Shown here: in pieces, positions 370-9,238 of the stretch | Layout: each line of letters starts with the position of its first letter | Numbering within the stretch: position 1 is the first letter of the stretch | DNA from: Vitrella brassicaformis CCMP3155 | Lineage: Eukaryota; Protista; Chromerida | Direction of reading: 5' to 3' | Assembly (NCBI GenBank): GCA_001179505.1 | Contig: CDMY01000322.1 | Span: 57,887-121,886 of the forward strand | Length of the DNA stretch: 64,000 nucleotides | The notes under the pieces: model-generated | Seen by the model: only the letters and a program-made list of their open reading frames with translations | What the model was told of the DNA's origin: nothing | Database searches by the model: none | Made by a program: the position numbers and the translations under genes

Positions 370-3300
370 TCACTCCACCAGCCGTGCACTTTGCCTGTCG
401 TCGCTGCCCATTGCCCTGCCCTCCCCTGTGCCGAGCCGTGACAATCGTCTCTTGAGTCGCCTACAGATGCGCTGGCACCAGGGGCAGCACACGCACAGCT
501 CATCGCGATAGCCCGTCTCGAAGTCATCCTCCTGTCCGATACACCGGCACACGCAACACAAGACACACAGAGAGGGATTGTCTGCACGCTGAGGATGGCG
601 CGGCTAGCTTACGGAATCCTCATCCTCGTCGGCAGCGACGACCTTCGAGCCTGCACACACACACACGCAGAGAGAGAGAGAGAGATCGTGTCGATGTCTG
701 CGCCCAGCAGCTGGGGATGGGATGGGCCGCTTACTTCTGCCCCAGTTGGCTCCCAGGATGTCCCGCTTGACGTTGGCAATCAGCGGCGGCTCGAAGGGGT
801 CCAGGAACAATATGCTGGTCGCTGGCGCCTCGTACAGACGGACAGTGTGCTGATCGTCCTGTAAGGGCAAGGCGGACAGGCAGGCAAATCCACGGAGAGC
901 GTATGTATGTGTGTCGGTGTCTACCTCGTCAATGTCGTCCTCCTGTGTGTCTGCCATTTTGCCCTGGACGGCGTGGAAGGCGTCGAGCCACACCTGCCGG
1001 TGCTGCATGGTGGGGGCGTGGAAATCATACACACGCGGCGGCAACGTGGGGCCCGCGCGCTGCAGCTGCACACACACACACACACACACACAGAGGGGCG
1101 GAGGATTTATGCTGGCCATTGATTGCATCTGTCTGCCAGTGATGTGTTTCATCCATACGAGTTGGAATCTGAGGTGCTGCGGGTCGTCCTCAGGGTCCGG
1201 CAGCCGGACGTCGGTGACGAACTTGAGGTCCACACTCCCCTGAGTGCACTCAGTCATGTCATTCACGCAGCCATGATTGTGCCTGTCTGTCTGTCTGCCT
1301 GCCTGTCCATTTTGTGTGCCGTGCCTACCTGTGAGATGGGGTTGTCTCGTGAAGGGTACCAGTAGAGCCGGCCGTTCTTGATGGCGCACCAATGCAGCTG
1401 CCAGCTGATCGATTCCAGGGGGAGTGAGTGACACAACGAGGAGAGAAGGGTGTGTGAGTCACCGACCGACCGACATGAATGAATGAATGGCTGGCTGGCT
1501 GGCGGGGACTTGCCTTTGGTTGAGGTGGCGAAGGTCTGGCCCCGATGTGACGGCGAGGGCCTGACTCTTGGCCACGTCCGCCAAACCTGCAACCAACAAT
1601 AGCAAGGCACATACACACACACACACACATGGTCAGGCAAGCATTCATTGCGCCCGTCTGACGTACCCCTCTTCTCGAAGTCTTTCTTGTACAAATGCCC
1701 CTCGCAGACCACGACGGGCAGCGTGGACTCAGCCATGATGTACTCCTCCTCGATATCCACACCCTCCTGCAAACACCACACAAACGACGGCCGGTGCATC
1801 CATCATTCTCCCTCCCTCTCCCTCCCAAGGATCGGTGCTCACAAATGAGCTCGACAGCTTCTGCATCTCAATCTCCTCCGTCGACTCGCCCCCCCTGGAC
1901 ACTGGCGAGCTCCCCGTCACACTCACAGACGGCCGGCTGCCATCCCGCGTTGACATCTCGCCAATCGACCCCCGCTCCCTCGCCGTCCCTCCAAATGACG
2001 GAGTTGGGCATGGGTCAGGCGTGGGGCTCTCGCCGCCTGGCCGAGTGAGGGCGGCCGCCCTTCTCCTGCTGGCCTCTGTGGGTGTGGACGGCGAGGGGTA
2101 TGGGGTGCGGATGAGTGCGGGGTGGGGGCTGACGTCACGGGCGCTGAGGAACCAGTCGAGGTTGTGCACCTGCGAGTCGGACTCTGCTCACACACACACA
2201 GAGAGAGAGAGAGAGGAGGGTGACTGGGTGTGTGTGTGTTGTGGGTGCTGGTACCTCCTGGCGGCAACGAGTCGGTGCTCTCCTGCCGCTCAGTCAGCCT
2301 GAAGAAACGACATTCAGACAAGAGTCGGGTACCTAGGTGGGTTGGGTGCTCTTCTTGTCGTCACATCTGACCTTTCCTCCCGTTGCTCTCCTATATCGGG
2401 CTCGGCTGCCGGCGGCGGCAGCGGTGGCGTGACGTGTCCCTTGCGCGGCACTGCGACCGTTTTGGACCTGCCTGCAGACTGCCGGCCCCCCCTGGTCTCT
2501 CGCTCCTCCCACATGCGCCCCGAATGCTGCCAGACAGACAGACAGACAGACAGGTGTGGTGTGTGTGGATCGTTGCCTTTGTTTCTTCCTTTCGGCCTTG
2601 TGCGTACTCTTCTCAGCGTGGCGACTTTGGTCCAGTGGAGCTCCTCGAACACCGAGCCCGTTATCGACGGCAGCCGCTCGCGACCACCGTCGCTGCACAC
2701 ACACACACACACACACAAAACCGATTCCCTTGTTCATTTCCCACAAGCCCCTGCAGACGTACGATCTCAACTGCCTTCGCGATTCGGCGTCTTGTGGCCC
2801 CCTTGTGGGTGTCCGGGATGGCTGTGTCGATGCGTCCGGCGACCGTGGTCCGGTGAGGGGGACGAACCTGAGGAGGCCGCCGGTCGGGGATGAGGCTGCT
2901 GTGTCGGGTTCGGGTGGGGCGCCCTCTTCCTCGTTGATGGACGACAGGGCCTCCTGGCAGCTGCTCAACACCTGATAGAGAGAAGGGCAGAGTGAGGGGT
3001 GGGGGTGTTGGGGGGTGTGTGTGGTTGCTGACTTCGTCTTTTTCCATCTTGTTGATGTCGTCTCTGAGAGCCACCAGCTGGGTGACCACATACATGTCGA
3101 AGAAGGGCCCGTACTTGCGCCGAAACTCGCACACCTGACACACACCACACACGACAAGAAAAGACAGACACCCTCTTCTCCTCTATGGGCCAAGCCACCT
3201 TGAAGGTGAGGAAGTCCGGCCGCTCCTGCAGCACGTCGCTCATGTCTTGCAGGATGGCCACTCGCCGCTTGGTGGCGGCCTCGCCCAGGAAGCTCTCGAA

Positions 3301-5734
3301 GAACTCACCCAACACGCCATAGTCGTTCCGGATCTTGGTCACCAGACGGGGGCGATCGGGGCGAGGGACGGGGTACCTGCCAAACACCCGACACACACAT
3401 TTGATGGATGGATGGATGGATGGAGCAGGGCGTATTATTACTTGATGAGGCCCTTGAGGTATATGACGAGTATGTGGTGGAGCAGCTGTGCGGCGATCCG
3501 CTGGACAAACACCCATTGCAAGTCCTCCTGCAGACGCTCAAGGGACGACGCCAGCAGCTCTGGGGGTGGCAAAAGTCGGACAGGACAGGACAGGCACACA
3601 ATGAGAGACGACCGTCCTGCCCTGCTGTTGTCGCTAGGCTGCTTTGCTTACGGATGGTCACGTGTCTAACGGGCATATCGATGACGTTCTTCCTCCTCAG
3701 CAACACAGCCGCATTGTTCAGCAGCCTACAACACACCGCACACACCACACCAAGTCCGAGGAACAGACCTTTGTCTGCCCGTGTCGCGTGTCGAAGCGCA
3801 CGGCCATCACCTGATGGCCAGCAGCTCCTCGACGATGGACGCGAGCGCGGCGAACCGCCTGGCCTCCTCGCGCAGGCTCAGAGAGGCCACTCGGTCGTCG
3901 GCGTCCATCATCCCGCCACCGAGGGTCGACGAGGAAGCGGCTGCTGTGTCGGGCTGCTCCGTCTCATAATTCAGACCCATATACCGATCTATAGTATACA
4001 CACAAAAGTGATCGACCACAGCGGTGCGGCGGTTTCTGCCTCCTTGCTTCGCTCTTTCCTTCTCACCGGTCGCCGCGCATTTCTCGATGAAAAGTGAGGT
4101 GTTGTTGAGCTGTGCGGCAAGGAAGTCCAGCCTCAGGTAGCCCTCCACGCCGCCCTCCGCCAGCAGCAGCTCCCGCAAAGTGACCTGGTAGTGGAACACC
4201 ACCGCCTTGGTGATCTCCAGCACCTTCTCGCTCAGCACACGGATGCGGGCGTCACGCGCTTGGGCTGACAGGGGGAGAGAGAGAGAGGAATGGCCGTGGG
4301 TGTGTGTGTGTGTACCGAGGTATGTGGTGACGAGATGGAAGAGGTCCACTGGGGCGGAGGTGTAGATCCAGTTCTCGATGGCGTGGCGGATGGGGCAGAA
4401 AATCGTCTCCTGACACACAGGGCACGAGTGTCGTCTTAGTGTCAATAGCGTCAGTCCCACCAACCACACCTGTTTGACAAGGTTGAAGACGAGCGGCACT
4501 GTGTTGGCGAGCACCCGCCGCGCGTATGCCTCGGCGAGGGCCTCAATGGCGGCGGGGTAGCAGAGGTCGAACACACCATACTCCTCATACCCAGTGCTCA
4601 ACACGTGCAGGAACTCCAGAATCGACTAACACACACACACACACACACACAGACGGCTCTCTCTCTCTCTCTCTGTGTGCGTGTGTGTGTGTGTGTGTGC
4701 GGCTCACGAAGACTTTTGCAGGGGGCATGGCCATGGTGTTCCGGAGGTCCCCAATGTCAACTTCCCCCTGTCGCTCCACATCGTGCCGCACAGCCGCCGT
4801 CCAGAAGTCCGCCAGCCCCACCAGAATGGGCCGGAGGTACTGCTCCACGATGAAGGCACACACGTCCTTCCGGGGCGGCCGCACCGACGTGGCCGCCTGC
4901 AGCAATGCCCCACACTCGTTGCTGAAGTCCTCGAGAAGCACCAGCAGCTGACATGGCCACCACAGAGACGGCCTCAGCTGCGTGTGAATGGAATGTGTTG
5001 GTGTGTGTACTTTGTCGATAGGGATGTCGGTAGCGTGGCTGGCGAGCAGCTGTGAGAGTGCGGGGAATGAGGTGGTGTCGGCGAGTGTCTTGGGGCTGGT
5101 CCCGCGCTCCTCGGCCACAGCCCACACAAACAACTACACACACATGAGGTCAGGGAGGGAGGAAGAGCCCAGCACCCACGTGACGACAGCGAAATGGACC
5201 GTTGAGTGCGTCTCTCCCGTCTCACCCGTGCAAGCTTGATTTTGATTGCGGCATCAGCCGCCCTCTTGCGCTCATCGGCCGGCGTCCTGTCGAACACCTG
5301 CAGCTGCTCCCTCACCGTCATATCGCGGCCCTAGCCACACACAACACAAACACCAGTCGTCCGTCACTTACACACATGGACTCTGTCTGCTAGGGCGTTC
5401 ATCGTTCACTCACCTGGTCAAGTGCCTCGGCGGCCTTCCTGGATGCCCGCAGTGCGTCGCGCCAGACGGTGGCTTCCTGCTGTGTGTCGGCCAGGATGCC
5501 CCGCAGGTAGTCGCCGCTGTGCAGGCGGACCTCAAAACCCTCGGCACGGGATATCACCTGAAGAACCGACGACCAGCCAGTGTGTGTGTTTGACTCGTTT
5601 CCTCTGTTTCTTCCTTGCCTACGTCAGATATGTCGATGCAGGAGCGCAGGTCGATGGCCCCCTTGGGACAGGAGCCGTCCATCTCTGCGGCGAAGTAGTA
5701 CAGCGTGTCCGCCTGCACTCCCAGCGGAAACCTA

Positions 5735-5771
<37 letters not shown>

Positions 5772-6945
5772 GCATCCTTTGCCGACACCGTGTGTGTGGC
5801 TTCTGCATGCTCACGTGGTCTCTGCAATGTGTCTGTTGATGGGCAGTGGCTGCGTGGCCCTCAGCGTGATGATGGGGCGGCTGGCGATGACCACGAAGTA
5901 GTAGCTGGTGGCGTACTGGGCAGACGAGGGGTCCTGCGCAATGATGGTGTCGCGGCGGTTCTTCTTGAGCTGCCCGAACAGCACGGACTCGAGGAAGCCT
6001 TCCTCGTCAGATGCACCCGCAGGCCCCTCCTCCTCTGCGGGTGGCTGCTCGCCTTCCGCTGATGATGCAGCCGGGCGGCTCTCGGCCCTTGACGCTTCCC
6101 ACGCCTGCAGATGACAGACAGGAGTCGACAGACAATTCGCTGCGTGTCTGTGCCTGACCATCTGCAGGGGTTCCCAGAGGCCCTTGAGTTTGAGGAACTG
6201 CCTCTTGGCGTCGGTGTTGGCGGAGTCCGGCCTGGCGGCCACCTGGTGCGGCCTGGCCTTGTACGCCCTGTATCTCGACGAACCGCCCAGCATCTCGACG
6301 AACCGCTCCTTCTTCTCCTCCTCCTCCACCGCACTGACCGATCCCATCACACACACACACACACACACACATTTTGACAGAAAGGCCGACACACGCGGGC
6401 CTGCCGCACACAAAACACCCACATACCGATCTGCGTGGAAGAGTCGCATCTTGGCTTCGAGGGCCTCCACCCATGCGTCCTTCTCGGCGGCCGTATGAGC
6501 CTTCAGGAACCAATCACGACCTGCCATGCACACCGACAGTCAGGCACCTTATCGCGCACCCGGTTGCCAATCGTCCCTCACCAGGCGAGAGCAGCGTGAA
6601 TTTGGTGGCGTCTTCGATGTGTATGCTCGACACGGCCATGAGGTTGATGATGCCCTTGGGCGGGTCAAGCTCTATCGACACCCCCGCCCTGGGCACCTTC
6701 CGCCAGTACCCCAGCTGCCGCCCGCCCTCAATCAGCTTGAAGTAGCGGTCCTGCCACCCGCCGATGAACGTGGCCGGGCGCTTCTGCAGCCATCCCTCGA
6801 CAGCAGTCGGGGAGGGCGGCCGGGAGCGGGCAGTGAACTCGACGGACTCGGCTGTGTAGTAGGGGGACGCCTCGCCATCGGTGGATTCGAACACCGCTGA
6901 CAAGACCTCCTTGATCGGACCTTCTGCCGGCGCTGCTACTGCCAT
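370..6945 (-). CDS. Multi-exon protein with two N-terminal PH domains, a central Sec6/EXOC3-like (CATCHR) helical region, a third PH domain and a Cys-cluster/basic C-terminus
   Basis: PH1: AVEGWLQKRPATFIGGWQDRYFKL...KGIINL...AEKDAWVEAL. PH2: VLFGQLKK...TLYYFAAEMDGSCPKGAIDLRSCIDI. PH3: CEGHLYKK...WQLHWCAIKNGRLYWY...RQVWLDAF. Sec6-like segments: YTSAPVDLFHLV, QLNNTSLFIE, KYGPFFDMYVVTQLVALRDD. Last exon reads EDDFETGYRDELCVCCPWCQRICRRLKRR...*, joined through donor TCC|GTAAGC. PH calls are strong; the Sec6 call is by motif resemblance only. Confidence 0.8.
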
Positions 6946-7249
6946 TGCAAGACCGCTCTCTGCACATGCAGCCGGGGGGCGTCGGGGGGGCGTCCTGACT
7001 CCTGAGACTCCGAGCGGACTCCCCGGCTCAGTCACCACTGCCAGTGGCGTCTTCTTATCGCGGCGTGCCCCTGAGCATCCTCATGCGTATTGATGTGTTG
7101 CATCAGCGACGGCCGTCTGATTGATTTGCTCATTCCTCGCTCTCTGTCGTCATCAAAGTGATAGAGGTCCTCCTCTGCTGCCGAATTCGTCGCTGATCAG
7201 TCGAAGACGCCGGAATTGCATCGACGCTGTCGGATCGCCGAGGCGGAAA
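6946..7249. promoter_or_regulatory. Short divergent intergenic region (candidate bidirectional promoter)
   Basis: About 300 bp between the inferred ATGs at 6945 (-) and 7250 (+). No specific motif identified. Confidence 0.4.
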
Positions 7250-9047
7250 ATGTTGGCGAGGAGGCTTTTCAAGCGCATTGGCGTGCTTCTGACGGCGAGT
7301 GGAGTCGCATCAGCTGGGCTGAAGACCCTCTTCGGTCGCCGAAGGTAGAGGAGATGAATCTCTCTCACAGTGTATCACTGACTCATGCATCCCTAGCTGT
7401 CCTTTGTTTGTGCCTGCAGGTGTGCATCATGGCTGGCATCGACACGGCCGCTGCAGGGGCTGACGGCTGTCGTCACAGGTCAGTCAGCAGGAAGGAGCCG
7501 ACCACGCACAATCACGACCTACGGTGAATGGAATGTGTGTGTGTGTGTGGATCAACGTGTGTGCAGGGGCGACGAGAGGCATTGGCCGCGGCATTGCGAG
7601 TATGTCACACGCACTGACGACGGAGTGCAGACGGAGCTTTCATTTTGATTAATTCTTATTGGCTGGCTGCAGTTGGTCTGGCGGAGAGTGGTGCGACAGT
7701 GTACATCACCGGGAGGACGCTGAAGGGGGGCAAAGACACCCTGGGGTCGCTGGAGGAGGTGCAGCAGACCATCAAAGACAAAGGTGAGAGAGACCACATC
7801 CGCACAAACAAACAAGCATACAGATGGATGGATGGATGTGTGTGTGTTTGTAGGTGGCGAGTGCATTGCCTTGCAGTGCGACAGCGCAGATGACCGGCAG
7901 CTGGAGCAGCTGTTCAAGAGAGTCGAGAGGGAGAATGGCGGTCTCGACGTGCTCGTCAACAACGCATTCACAATACGTACGGCAGCACAAACCACAAAGC
8001 ACCAGCCAGACAGACAGACTTGTCAGGCAGCAAACGACCACCCGCTTTTGCCGCTGCTGTCTGTGTCTGTCTGTGTCTGTGTCTGTGTCTGTGTCTCTGT
8101 CTGTGTCTGTGTGTCTGTATGTCTGTGTGTGTGTGTTGCAGCCCAGCCAGTGAGCGACTGGATGGGCAAGCCCTTCTGGCAATCACCCGCCAAACTCTGG
8201 GACGTCATCAACGGGGTAAGACGGCGCACACGAAGGCACACATGAAGGTCACCATTACCTTAATCAACAGGTCGGTCTCCGCTCCCATTTCGTTGCGAGT
8301 GCCTTGGCAAGCCCGTTGCTGCTGCAGCGAAAGGGGCTAATCGTCAATGTGAGCAGCTGGGGCGGTGTCAGGTACATATTCCATGTCATCTACGGGATCG
8401 GCAAGGCGGGAATGGACCGTATGGCGGCCGACATGGCCGAAGAACTTAAACCGCACAACGTCACGGTCGTCAGTCTCTGGCCGGGAAAAGTAAGATCATA
8501 CACACACATGCGTCGTGACCACGGTGGGTCTCTTCAATCAATGTGTGGCTGCTGTGAATGGCAGGTGCGAACAGAGAACTTTTACAAGCTGCTGCAAGAA
8601 AACGGTCAGTCTGGAGGCATTAGGTCACTCTGATGTGGCGAGAGTGTGTGTGTTCTGGTGCGACCTGTGTCAGATCCCCTGACCAAGGGCGTGTTGGACC
8701 CCTACCTGTCTGAGTCCCCACTGTACAGCGGCCGGGCAGTGGCGGCACTGGCCTCACTCCCACCACACAAACGACTCAAGCGGACGGGATCGGTGCAGGT
8801 CAGCAAAACCCCACAACCACGTCGCACATTCTTCTTACACGTGTGTGCGTCTGTGCAGGTGACAGCCGAATTGGCGAGTGAGTTCAACTTTAACGATGAG
8901 GACGGCACGAGACCGCCCTCATTTCGGTCACTGCGATTCTTGCTGCCGTCGGGGGTGAAGGCGCTCAAGGGGAAGGAGCAGCTGGTGCCCGACATCAGGA
9001 TACCATGGTGGCTCATCAAGACACAGGCGTCGCCCAAGTTCTCATAG
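7250..9047 (+). CDS. DHRS1: Short-chain dehydrogenase/reductase, DHRS1-like
   Basis: Spliced LQGLTAVVT|GATRGIGRGIA (TGxxxGxG), GATVYITGR, LDVLVNNA, LIVNVSSWGG, YGIGKA (YxxxK), VSLWPG, ESPLYSGRAVAAL; stop at 9047. Exon 1 MLARRLFKR... splices in frame via AG|G. Confidence 0.9.
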
Positions 9048-9238
9048 ATATGCACACGAATACACTCACGGGGGGACGGTCCATTGATGGAGAGACGGAC
9101 GCACAGACGTTGATGTAAGTAACGATGGCAGATCGTCTAAGGGAGTCTCCATCTATCAGTCAGTCTAGCATCAGCCTATGCAGCGCACCCTCAACACCGA
9201 CCCACACAGACACACACACACATAATTTCCACCCACCT

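What the first reader, a model, noticed from the sequence alone, without database searches (positions are those of the whole stretch)
370..6945. PH-PH-Sec6-like-PH fusion: candidate self-contained, lipid-sensing exocytosis tether
Seen: three PH-type motif sets surround a long helical region carrying TSAPVDLFHLV, LNN and KYGPFFDMYVVTQLVALRDD. Established: Sec6/EXOC3 ends in a YPD...H..ALL..RGD-like motif and normally has no PH domains; CATCHR tethers of the CAPS/Munc13 type do pair lipid-binding domains with a helical rod; apicomplexans have a reduced exocyst. Inference: this is an exocyst-derived or MUN-like tether that binds phosphoinositides on its own, an architecture I do not recognise.
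Basis: partly seen in the sequence, partly recalled or inferred. Interest (0 to 1): 0.72.

Follow-up and report, generated by a model that had tools for sequence, protein, structure and literature searches.

The report
Stand-alone Sec6-like tether flanked by PH domains
This alga, probably the chromerid Vitrella, expresses one gene that joins lipid-binding-type PH domains to a rod-shaped domain of the exocyst subunit Sec6, although published surveys found no exocyst subunit in this lineage or in the related malaria and Toxoplasma parasites.

Summary

- **One gene.** Window 6945-370 (minus strand) is a gene of about 30 exons, encoding 1405-1456 aa. Two runs each hold a single spliced contig across window 1665-6999, with GT..AG joints at the predicted introns.
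- **Layout.** PH1, a helix, a PH-like segment (PH2), a helical rod of about 530 aa, a disordered linker of about 265 aa, PH3, and a short tail.
- **Relatives.** A full HMMER scan of 1.84 billion proteins found only three full or partial relatives. They are Chromera velia Cvel_22002, a transcriptome protein and an intronless environmental ORF.
- **Sec6 identity.** The Chromera orthologue matches Pfam Sec6 above the curated cut-off (47.3 against 29.7 bits). Its AlphaFold model is closest to yeast Sec6, M-Sec and plant SEC6.
- **What is missing.** The first ~190 residues of Sec6, which bundle it into the exocyst, have no counterpart. PH modules sit there instead.
- **PH domains.** PH1 and PH3 are verified. 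PH2 is not.
- **Untested.** Lipid binding and tethering are inferred, and PH1 and PH3 lack the full high-affinity phosphoinositide motif.
- **Literature.** No paper found describes this architecture. Published surveys report no exocyst subunit in chromerids.

This is a new variant of a known kind.

The parts
370..6945 (-). Whole gene, about 30 exons, 1405 aa (stop at 606-604) or 1456 aa (last exon 531-370)
   Evidence: Exon chain built. Spliced contigs of runs X6 and X7 span 1665-6999 with CT..AC joints.
6427..6801 (-). PH1 (exon 1 from VEGWLQKR, plus exon 2 with the C-terminal helix)
   Evidence: Pfam PH E 9e-4 on the exon-1 ORF. Orthologue P0003 scores PH E 8.2e-24. AlphaFold pLDDT is 85-94 for the orthologous domain.
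6159..6333 (-). Conserved helical linker after PH1 (exon 3)
   Evidence: Aligned with P0003 and P0005. A long helix, residues 97-137, in the model.
5414..5999 (-). PH2-like segment (GFLESVLFG... to ...TVWRDALRAS; exons 4-6), unverified
   Evidence: Conserved in P0003 and P0005. No Pfam hit, pLDDT 30-49, hhalign probability 10.5%. Absent from P0004.
2939..5330 (-). Sec6-family CATCHR helical region (exons 7-18 start, about aa 393-925)
   Evidence: Colinear tblastn with P0003 residues 341-844. P0003 residues 439-813 match PF06046 at 47.3 bits. Structural matches to Sec6.
4329..4361 (-). TSAPVDLFHLV motif (family-conserved APVDLF)
4101..4109 (-). LNN within AQLNNTSLF[IV]EKC, the most conserved stretch of the family
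3057..3116 (-). KYGPFFDMYVVTQLVALRDD, counterpart of the C-terminal end of the Sec6 model
   Evidence: The P0003 Sec6 match ends at residue 813, within KYGRGFNLAVLKCIVFLRSDL, at model position 535 of 537.
1767..2938 (-). Low-complexity linker, about 265 aa, rich in S, P, R, E, G and T
   Evidence: Composition. Exons joined in run contigs.
961..1724 (-). PH3 (exons 23-27)
   Evidence: Pfam PH E 0.16 and 0.016 on ORF pieces. Orthologues score 37.1 and 27.5 bits against a cut-off of 25.1. tblastn of P0004 945-970 hits 1406-1329.
793..810 (-). LFLDPF, the conserved LF[FL]DP[FW] motif after PH3
   Evidence: Also in P0003 at 1215 and P0004 at 1113.
370..531 (-). Possible last exon with a Cys-rich basic tail (CVCCPWCQRICRRLKRRL); not covered by the reads laid
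   Evidence: Frame and acceptor. Only a 7-residue, non-significant likeness to the Chromera tail (E 0.19).

Best explanation
This is one expressed, intron-rich gene. Its product is a stand-alone member of the Sec6 (EXOC3) family. It has a CATCHR helical rod equivalent to yeast Sec6 residues about 191-800, with the N-terminal assembly helix of Sec6 replaced by PH1 and a PH-like segment. A third PH domain hangs on a disordered linker of about 265 residues at the C-terminal side. Shown: the gene model, the single transcript, the Sec6-family identity of the rod (through the Chromera orthologue), PH1 and PH3, and conservation of the layout in three relatives. Inferred: because the part that bundles Sec6 with Sec8 is missing, and published surveys found no other exocyst subunit in chromerids, the protein most likely works outside an octameric exocyst. 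In this reading the PH modules bring it to membranes, by lipids or by a membrane-bound partner. The Sec6 rod would then do what Sec6-family rods do elsewhere: hold a vesicle or membrane near its target and engage SNARE or SM proteins. The working analogy is M-Sec/TNFAIP2 or CAPS rather than a canonical exocyst subunit.
For: Splicing and continuity: runs X6 and X7 each hold one contig (7204 and 8922 nt) covering 1665-6999 with CT..AC joints at the predicted introns. Relatives: a full HMMER scan gave Chromera velia Cvel_22002/A0A0G4GI63 (E 5.8e-17), a 1292-aa intronless ORF from run SRR22729506, and a 708-aa transcriptome protein. The window is colinear with P0003 from PH1 to the end of the rod. 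Sec6 identity: P0003 matches PF06046 at E 1.5e-12, 47.3 bits against a cut-off of 29.7, model positions 131-535 of 537; no other CATCHR family appears at E<=1. P0005 scores 5.8e-5 and P0004 0.0039. Fold: AlphaFold model of P0003:330-880, pLDDT 68, with the first 300 residues about 80. Foldseek PDB puts 2FJI Sec6 first (E 2e-5), then 5YFP chain C and M-Sec 5B86. VIA-align gives Sec6 Z 16.2, and model 1-529 aligns to Sec6 191-799. The ESM Atlas top hit is a SEC6-like cluster at TM 0.73, against 0.57 or less for other families. Analogy: M-Sec binds PI(4,5)P2 through an N-terminal polybasic region (PMC5024327).
Against: No piece of the window's own translation hits the Sec6 model at E<=1, so family membership rests on orthology with P0003. 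A profile of three relatives found no Sec6 chain in the PDB by sequence. MUN domains score only about 2 Z units lower. Pfam Sec6 can cross-hit other clan members, since Vps53 clusters carry PF06046 hits. The C-terminal 250 residues of the model have pLDDT 55-65. PH1 reads K...W-Q-[DE]-R and PH3 has no arginine in strand 2, so neither has the full K-Xn-(K/R)-X-R signature. Lipid binding is therefore not predicted with confidence. No localisation, partner or lipid data exist.
Confidence: 0.72

Rival explanations
1. The rod is a CATCHR domain of another family (Vps53/GARP-like, Munc13/CAPS MUN-like, or an orphan CATCHR), and the Sec6 label is a clan-level cross-hit.
For: MUN domains reach Z 14.1-14.4 against 16.2 for Sec6. 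The language-model search ranks Vps53, Sec10 and unc-13 clusters at the same score as Sec6 (0.89-0.91). Vps53 clusters themselves carry PF06046 hits. Sequence identity to solved Sec6 is only 12-15%.
Against: Sec6 is the only CATCHR Pfam family reported for P0003, P0004 and P0005 at E<=1. In P0003 it passes the curated cut-off over 400 model positions, up to the C-terminal end. Sec6-family structures take ranks 1-5 in Foldseek PDB. A SEC6 cluster stands well above all others in the Atlas shape search, TM 0.73 against 0.57 or less.
Confidence: 0.1
2. It is a Sec6-family protein, but the PH domains are protein-binding modules, for example for a small GTPase as in the Exo84 PH-RalA pair. On this reading the protein is an adaptor or regulator, not a lipid-sensing tether.
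For: PH1 and PH3 lack the complete K-Xn-(K/R)-X-R motif (sequence). Most PH domains do not bind phosphoinositides tightly, and the Exo84 PH domain binds RalA (own knowledge). A conserved LF[FL]DP[FW] motif after PH3 resembles adaptor-ear-binding peptides.
Against: Conserved basic residues remain at the end of strand 1 and in strand 2 of PH1: [KR]K...WQ[ED]R[YW][FL][KR] in all four sequences. Two or three PH modules in one chain favour avidity for membranes. A possible Cys-rich basic tail (531-370) also points to membranes.
Confidence: 0.15
3. The fusion is an artefact: the PH parts and the helical part are separate genes, or the contig is chimeric.
For: The run contigs extend about 2.9 kb beyond 6999 and may merge with a neighbouring transcript. 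The tool warns that a contig across two genes shows no single transcript.
Against: The reading frame is continuous through all 29 splice junctions. The same order PH-(PH)-Sec6-PH is found in the annotated Chromera protein, and in one uninterrupted 1292-aa ORF on an intronless contig.
Confidence: 0.02

Closest known systems
Exocyst subunit Sec6 / EXOC3 (Pfam PF06046; yeast Sec6p, PDB 2FJI and 5YFP chain C)
   Same: The helical rod matches the Sec6 profile in the orthologue, through to the C-terminal motif. It is the best structural match, covering Sec6 residues 191-799.
   Different: There is no counterpart of the first ~190 residues of Sec6, the N-terminal helix that pairs Sec6 with Sec8 in the assembled exocyst (own knowledge of the 5YFP structure). 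PH domains lie on both sides and a long disordered linker follows the rod. The other seven subunits were reported as not identifiable in Chromera and Vitrella (PMC4501334).
M-Sec / TNFAIP2 and the EXOC3L paralogues (Sec6-family proteins outside the core octamer; PDB 5B86)
   Same: A Sec6-family rod with its own membrane-binding N-terminal element. M-Sec binds PI(4,5)P2 through an N-terminal polybasic region (PMC5024327). Structural match Z 13.8 over model residues 1-531.
   Different: M-Sec uses a short basic stretch, not PH domains. It is a vertebrate paralogue that still cooperates with Ral and the exocyst. No orthology is implied.
CAPS and Munc13 (lipid-binding C1/C2/PH domains plus a MUN CATCHR rod)
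   Same: The same design principle: membrane-binding modules joined to a CATCHR rod that acts on SNAREs. MUN is the second-best structural match, Z 14.1-14.4.
   Different: No Pfam MUN or CAPS family hit. Sec6 ranks above MUN in every search. There are no C1 or C2 domains.
Exo84 and Sec3 (the exocyst subunits that carry PH-type domains)
   Same: A PH-type domain and a CATCHR rod in one chain.
   Different: No Exo84_C or Sec3 Pfam hit. The Atlas shape score for Exo84B is 0.57 against 0.73 for SEC6. Those subunits keep the N-terminal assembly helices.
Chromera velia Cvel_22002 (UniProt A0A0G4GI63, 'PH domain-containing protein')
   Same: Orthologue with the same order of parts. It is 35-42% identical in the rod. 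Its precomputed Pfam list holds PH and Sec6.
   Different: No paper in the library names it. Its function is unstudied.

Membership tests
Sec6 / EXOC3 family (PF06046) | Sequence match to the family profile above the curated cut-off | tested here: met
   Met in the orthologue P0003: 47.3 bits against 29.7, E 1.5e-12, model 131-535 of 537. P0005 and P0004 fall below the cut-off (22.3 and 16.2 bits). Window ORF pieces give no hit at E<=1, so the window is linked through orthology.
Sec6 / EXOC3 family (PF06046) | CATCHR fold with Sec6 as nearest structure | tested here: met
   Tested on the model of P0003:330-880. Foldseek ranks 1-3 are Sec6 and ranks 4-5 M-Sec. VIA Z 16.2. Atlas SEC6 cluster TM 0.73. 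The window protein itself was not folded.
Sec6 / EXOC3 family (PF06046) | C-terminal conserved motif at the end of the domain | tested here: met
   The P0003 match ends at residue 813, in KYGRGFNLAVLKCIVFLRSDL, at model position 535 of 537. The window has KYGPFFDMYVVTQLVALRDD at 3116-3057.
Exocyst subunit (part of the octamer) | N-terminal assembly helix (CorEx) pairing Sec6 with Sec8 | tested here: not met
   The structural alignment starts at Sec6 residue 191 and the profile match starts at model position 131. PH1, a linker helix and PH2 lie upstream of the rod.
Exocyst subunit (part of the octamer) | Partner subunits Sec3, Sec5, Sec8, Sec10, Sec15, Exo70 and Exo84 present in the genome | not testable with these tools
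   Only this 64-kb window can be read. Published surveys found none in Chromera or Vitrella (PMC4501334; PMC3785458). The scan's notes on this genome hold no exocyst entry.
PH domain (PF00169) | Profile match and PH fold for PH1 | tested here: met
   Window exon-1 ORF scores 20.2 bits, partial domain. P0003 scores 84.6 bits. Model pLDDT 85-94 with seven strands and a helix.
PH domain (PF00169) | Profile match for PH3 | tested here: met
   P0003:1060-1200 scores 37.1 bits and P0004:900-1060 scores 27.5 bits, against a cut-off of 25.1. Window pieces give E 0.16 and 0.016.
PH domain (PF00169) | Profile match or PH fold for the second segment (PH2) | tested here: inconclusive
   No Pfam hit. AlphaFold shows five strands and a helix, but at pLDDT 30-49. 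hhalign against PH1+PH3 gives probability 10.5% and pairwise E 0.003 over 46 columns.
High-affinity phosphoinositide-binding PH domains | K-Xn-(K/R)-X-R signature in strands 1-2 | tested here: not met
   Read from the sequence. PH1 is GWLQKR...GGWQDRYFK (Q and D where K/R-X is expected), and this is conserved as WQ[ED]R in relatives. PH3 is HLYKK...WQLHWCAIK. The signature is recalled from my own knowledge.
Munc13 / CAPS MUN domain | Profile match to MUN or CAPS families | tested here: not met
   No such Pfam family at E<=1 in P0003, P0004 or P0005. There is structural likeness only, Z 14.1-14.4.

The most novel reading that the evidence does not exclude
This protein is the last surviving piece of the exocyst in the chromerid/colpodellid lineage. 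On this reading, as the octamer was lost in the ancestors of apicomplexans and dinoflagellates, Sec6 shed its assembly helix, acquired PH domains, and became a single-chain, membrane-anchored tether or SNARE regulator. It might serve polarised or apical secretion. That would give a living intermediate for how the apical-complex lineage replaced exocyst-dependent exocytosis.
Probability: 0.3. Interest if true: 0.78.

Novelty: new variant of a known kind. Interest (0 to 1): 0.6.

Why it matters
Three comparative studies state that no exocyst subunit can be identified in apicomplexans, dinoflagellates, Chromera or Vitrella. They treat this as an ancestral loss tied to the rise of the apical secretory apparatus (PMC3785458, PMC4501334, PMC6784791).

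A transcribed, conserved Sec6-family gene in chromerids qualifies that statement. It shows that a CATCHR rod can be kept without its complex if it gains membrane-binding modules of its own. Vertebrate M-Sec and the CAPS/Munc13 proteins reached a similar design independently.

It also gives a concrete candidate for the late exocytic step in free-living relatives of the parasites. Whether a still more divergent descendant exists in apicomplexans now becomes testable.

Tried and rejected
- **Pfam on ten window ORF pieces.** Only weak PH hits and no CATCHR family. The exons are too short, so this says little.
- **Word-index protein searches.** Searches with P0003 region 380-870, with profile A5 and with P0004 region 150-700 each returned only the query. 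The candidate list was cut at 8000 and even known relatives were missed. These blanks carry no weight.
- **Metagenome scans.** Two scans of JGI metagenome contigs, with patterns from conserved stretches, found no relative.
- **Profile search of PDB sequences.** The three-member profile A2 gave no Sec6 chain and only chance hits.
- **Mixed alignment A1.** MAFFT scattered the short exon rows, so I did not use it as a profile. I used A2, which holds relatives only.
- **Separate-genes reading.** Rejected.
- **MUN/CAPS and Exo84 readings.** Rejected as family assignments. They are kept as functional analogies.
- **Cys-rich tail.** Likeness to the Chromera tail is not significant (E 0.19), so the last exon stays provisional.
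- **Origin of the relatives.** Identifying the organism of transcriptome GHVR01 by paper search failed. SRR22729506 is a spruce-bark enrichment sample.
- **Joined model.** I built the joined spliced protein only inside local scripts, to check frames and coordinates. It was never sent to a search or fold tool. All searches used single exons or stop-free stretches by reference, or the relatives' protein ids. The window's own full-length protein was therefore neither scanned against Pfam nor folded.
Full report
**What is in the sequence**

The region 370-6945 lies in GC-rich DNA (56-65% GC). On the minus strand it shows a long series of short open stretches separated by stops.

Reading the minus strand, I chained exons that keep one frame. 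The result is 29-30 exons with introns of 51-109 nt (mean 76). All introns are GT-AG except one GC-AG. The stop is either TAG at 606-604 (1405 aa) or, if a further 81-nt intron is removed, TGA at 372-370 (1456 aa).

The three quoted motifs sit in frame at 4361-4329, 4109-4101 and 3116-3057.

**Is it one gene?**

One search found eight public runs that hold this stretch. I laid four of them on window 1000-6999.

Runs X6 and X7 each hold a single contig (7204 and 8922 nt). Each covers 1665-6999 and skips my predicted introns with CT..AC ends on the plus strand, which is GT..AG on the gene's strand. Fifteen joints are listed, two more follow from the contig pieces, and a loose-end consensus gives the 1159|1065 joint.

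The reads corrected two of my boundaries. Exon 9 starts at 4947, not 4977. Exon 18 runs to 2763, not 2868. Both changes keep the frame.

So PH1, the helical region and the first exon of PH3 lie on one spliced molecule with an unbroken reading frame. The runs are kept as contigs and are not on record as RNA. The spliced form is what identifies them as cDNA. The contigs run about 2.9 kb beyond 6999, probably into the divergent neighbouring gene, so I do not use them to define the 5' end.

**Relatives**

The helical exons are too short for family scans. I therefore used the stop-free stretch window:3811-4625 (minus strand). It reads through three in-frame introns and contains exons 10-13. I gave it to the exhaustive HMMER search of 1.84 billion representative proteins.

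Only five proteins came back:

- Two are fragments from a near-identical ENA contig.
- P0003 (1328 aa, E 5.8e-17) is Chromera velia Cvel_22002 / A0A0G4GI63, named only 'PH domain-containing protein'.
- P0004 (1292 aa) is one uninterrupted ORF on a 5.3-kb contig from run SRR22729506, a spruce-bark enrichment.
- P0005 (708 aa) is a truncated transcriptome protein held in EukProt.

The window is colinear with P0003 from PH1 to the end of the rod.

Other notes of this scan name the genome Vitrella brassicaformis. I did not test that. The roughly 40% identity to Chromera is consistent with it.

**What the helical region is**

- **Sequence.** P0003 matches Pfam Sec6 (PF06046) at E 1.5e-12 and 47.3 bits, against a curated cut-off of 29.7. 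The match covers model positions 131-535 of 537 and residues 439-813. P0005 and P0004 match the same family more weakly. No other CATCHR family appears at E<=1. The match ends inside KYGRGFNLAVLKCIVFLRSDL, the counterpart of the window's KYGPFFDMYVVTQLVALRDD.
- **Model.** An AlphaFold model of P0003:330-880, from a three-sequence alignment, is all-helical. Mean pLDDT is 68, about 80 over the first 300 residues and 55-65 after that.
- **Foldseek against the PDB.** Yeast Sec6p (2FJI) takes ranks 1-2, Sec6 in the exocyst (5YFP chain C) rank 3 and M-Sec ranks 4-5. Munc13, Exo70, Tip20, myosin V tails and Sec15 follow.
- **VIA-align.** Sec6 scores Z 16.2, MUN 14.1-14.4, M-Sec 13.8 and 5YFP chain C 13.7. 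Model residues 1-529 align to Sec6 residues 191-799.
- **ESM Atlas shape search.** A plant SEC6-like cluster comes first at TM 0.73 over 490 residues. The best other-family hit is Exo84B at 0.57, and a second, basidiomycete Sec6 cluster scores 0.54.
- **Language-model look-ups.** These returned only CATCHR tethering families.

The rod is therefore a CATCHR domain. On three independent measures it is a Sec6-family one.

Three cautions apply. The window's own pieces do not reach the Sec6 model. A small family profile finds no Sec6 chain in the PDB by sequence. Pfam Sec6 is known here to cross-hit Vps53 clusters.

**What is missing and what is added**

The rod corresponds to Sec6 from about residue 191 onward. 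The N-terminal part of Sec6 contributes the helix that bundles it with Sec8 in the assembled exocyst (my own knowledge of the 5YFP structure). That part has no counterpart here. Upstream of the rod lie PH1, a 40-residue helix and the PH2-like segment.

- **PH1** is secure. P0003 scores 84.6 bits, and the model has pLDDT 85-94 with seven strands and a helix.
- **PH3** is secure in the relatives, at 37.1 and 27.5 bits against a cut-off of 25.1.
- **PH2** is conserved in Chromera and P0005 but is absent from P0004. It has no Pfam hit. It is modelled with the right order of strands and a helix, but only at pLDDT 30-49. It matches a PH1+PH3 profile at only 10% probability. I leave it as PH-like and unverified.

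Between the rod and PH3 lies a linker of about 265 residues rich in S, P, R, E, G and T.

**How it most likely works (inference)**

The assembly helix is absent, and published surveys found none of the eight exocyst subunits in Chromera or Vitrella. The protein probably acts without an octamer.

PH modules at both ends, one of them on a long flexible linker, would suit a molecule that holds on to one or two membranes. The rod would meanwhile engage SNARE or SM proteins, as Sec6, M-Sec, CAPS and Munc13 do in their systems.

The lipid-sensing part is the weakest link. PH1 has conserved basic residues: [KR]K at the end of strand 1 and WQ[ED]R[YW][FL][KR] in strand 2. It lacks the first basic residue of the K-Xn-(K/R)-X-R signature, and PH3 lacks the arginines. 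Binding to a small GTPase or another protein is therefore a live alternative.

**Novelty**

The precomputed Pfam list of the Chromera protein already shows PH plus Sec6, so the layout can be seen in public databases. I found no paper that names the protein, a PH-Sec6 fusion, or a Sec6-family gene in chromerids. The three relevant surveys state the opposite.

I found no relative in apicomplexans, dinoflagellates or ciliates. Only the single-sequence HMMER scan has real reach. The word-index searches and metagenome scans are uninformative blanks.

**Limits of this work**

No search or fold was run on it. Family and fold evidence comes from single exons, one stop-free stretch and the relatives.

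Noticed in passing
window 370-6945, introns of the gene: Many of the short introns (51-109 nt) carry a (TG)n tract just upstream of the acceptor on the coding strand. Nine of 29 have a TG run of 12-30 nt within the last 40 nt. Others hold CA, CT or GA runs. This is why the six-frame ORFs are full of CVCVCV and HTHTHT strings.
   Followed up: partly
window 793-810 (minus strand); P0003 residue 1215; P0004 residue 1113: A conserved LF[FL]DP[FW] motif, followed by ILG.[DN]WG, lies just after PH3 in all three full-length family members. It resembles DP[FW]/FxDxF peptides that bind adaptor appendage domains (own knowledge). It may instead be part of a folded element.
   Followed up: no
window 370-531 (minus strand): A possible last exon encodes a Cys-rich, basic tail (ELCVCCPWCQRICRRLKRRL) that could be a lipidation or membrane-binding element. 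The Chromera protein also ends with a Cys-containing tail, but the likeness is not significant (E 0.19). The reads laid did not cover this exon.
   Followed up: partly
window 6999 to about 9950: The spliced contigs of runs X6 and X7 continue about 2.9 kb beyond 6999. That direction leads into a plus-strand gene at about 7645-9050, whose ORFs look like a short-chain dehydrogenase (GATVYITGR...). This suggests overlapping divergent transcripts or a merged contig.
   Followed up: no
window 1405-1513 (minus strand): The only non-GT donor of the model is a GC-AG intron (GCAAGT...CAG) after the 73-nt exon 1586-1514. Its acceptor-side joint was not among the rows shown by read laying, so this exon boundary is unconfirmed.
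   Followed up: no
P0001 and P0002 (ENA contig of 2886 nt) against window 3811-4400: A public contig carries the same exons almost letter for letter, but differs in the intron read-throughs and at a few residues (for example MINADD for MMDADD). A second strain, allele or close species of this alga therefore exists in public data.
   Followed up: no
L001 (SRR22729506 contig, gene at 1284-5162): The environmental relative P0004 is intronless and AT-rich, and it lacks the PH2 segment (layout PH-Sec6-PH). It comes from a spruce-bark microbial enrichment. This suggests a heterotrophic soil or wood protist related to chromerids, perhaps a colpodellid. The organism was not identified.
   Followed up: partly
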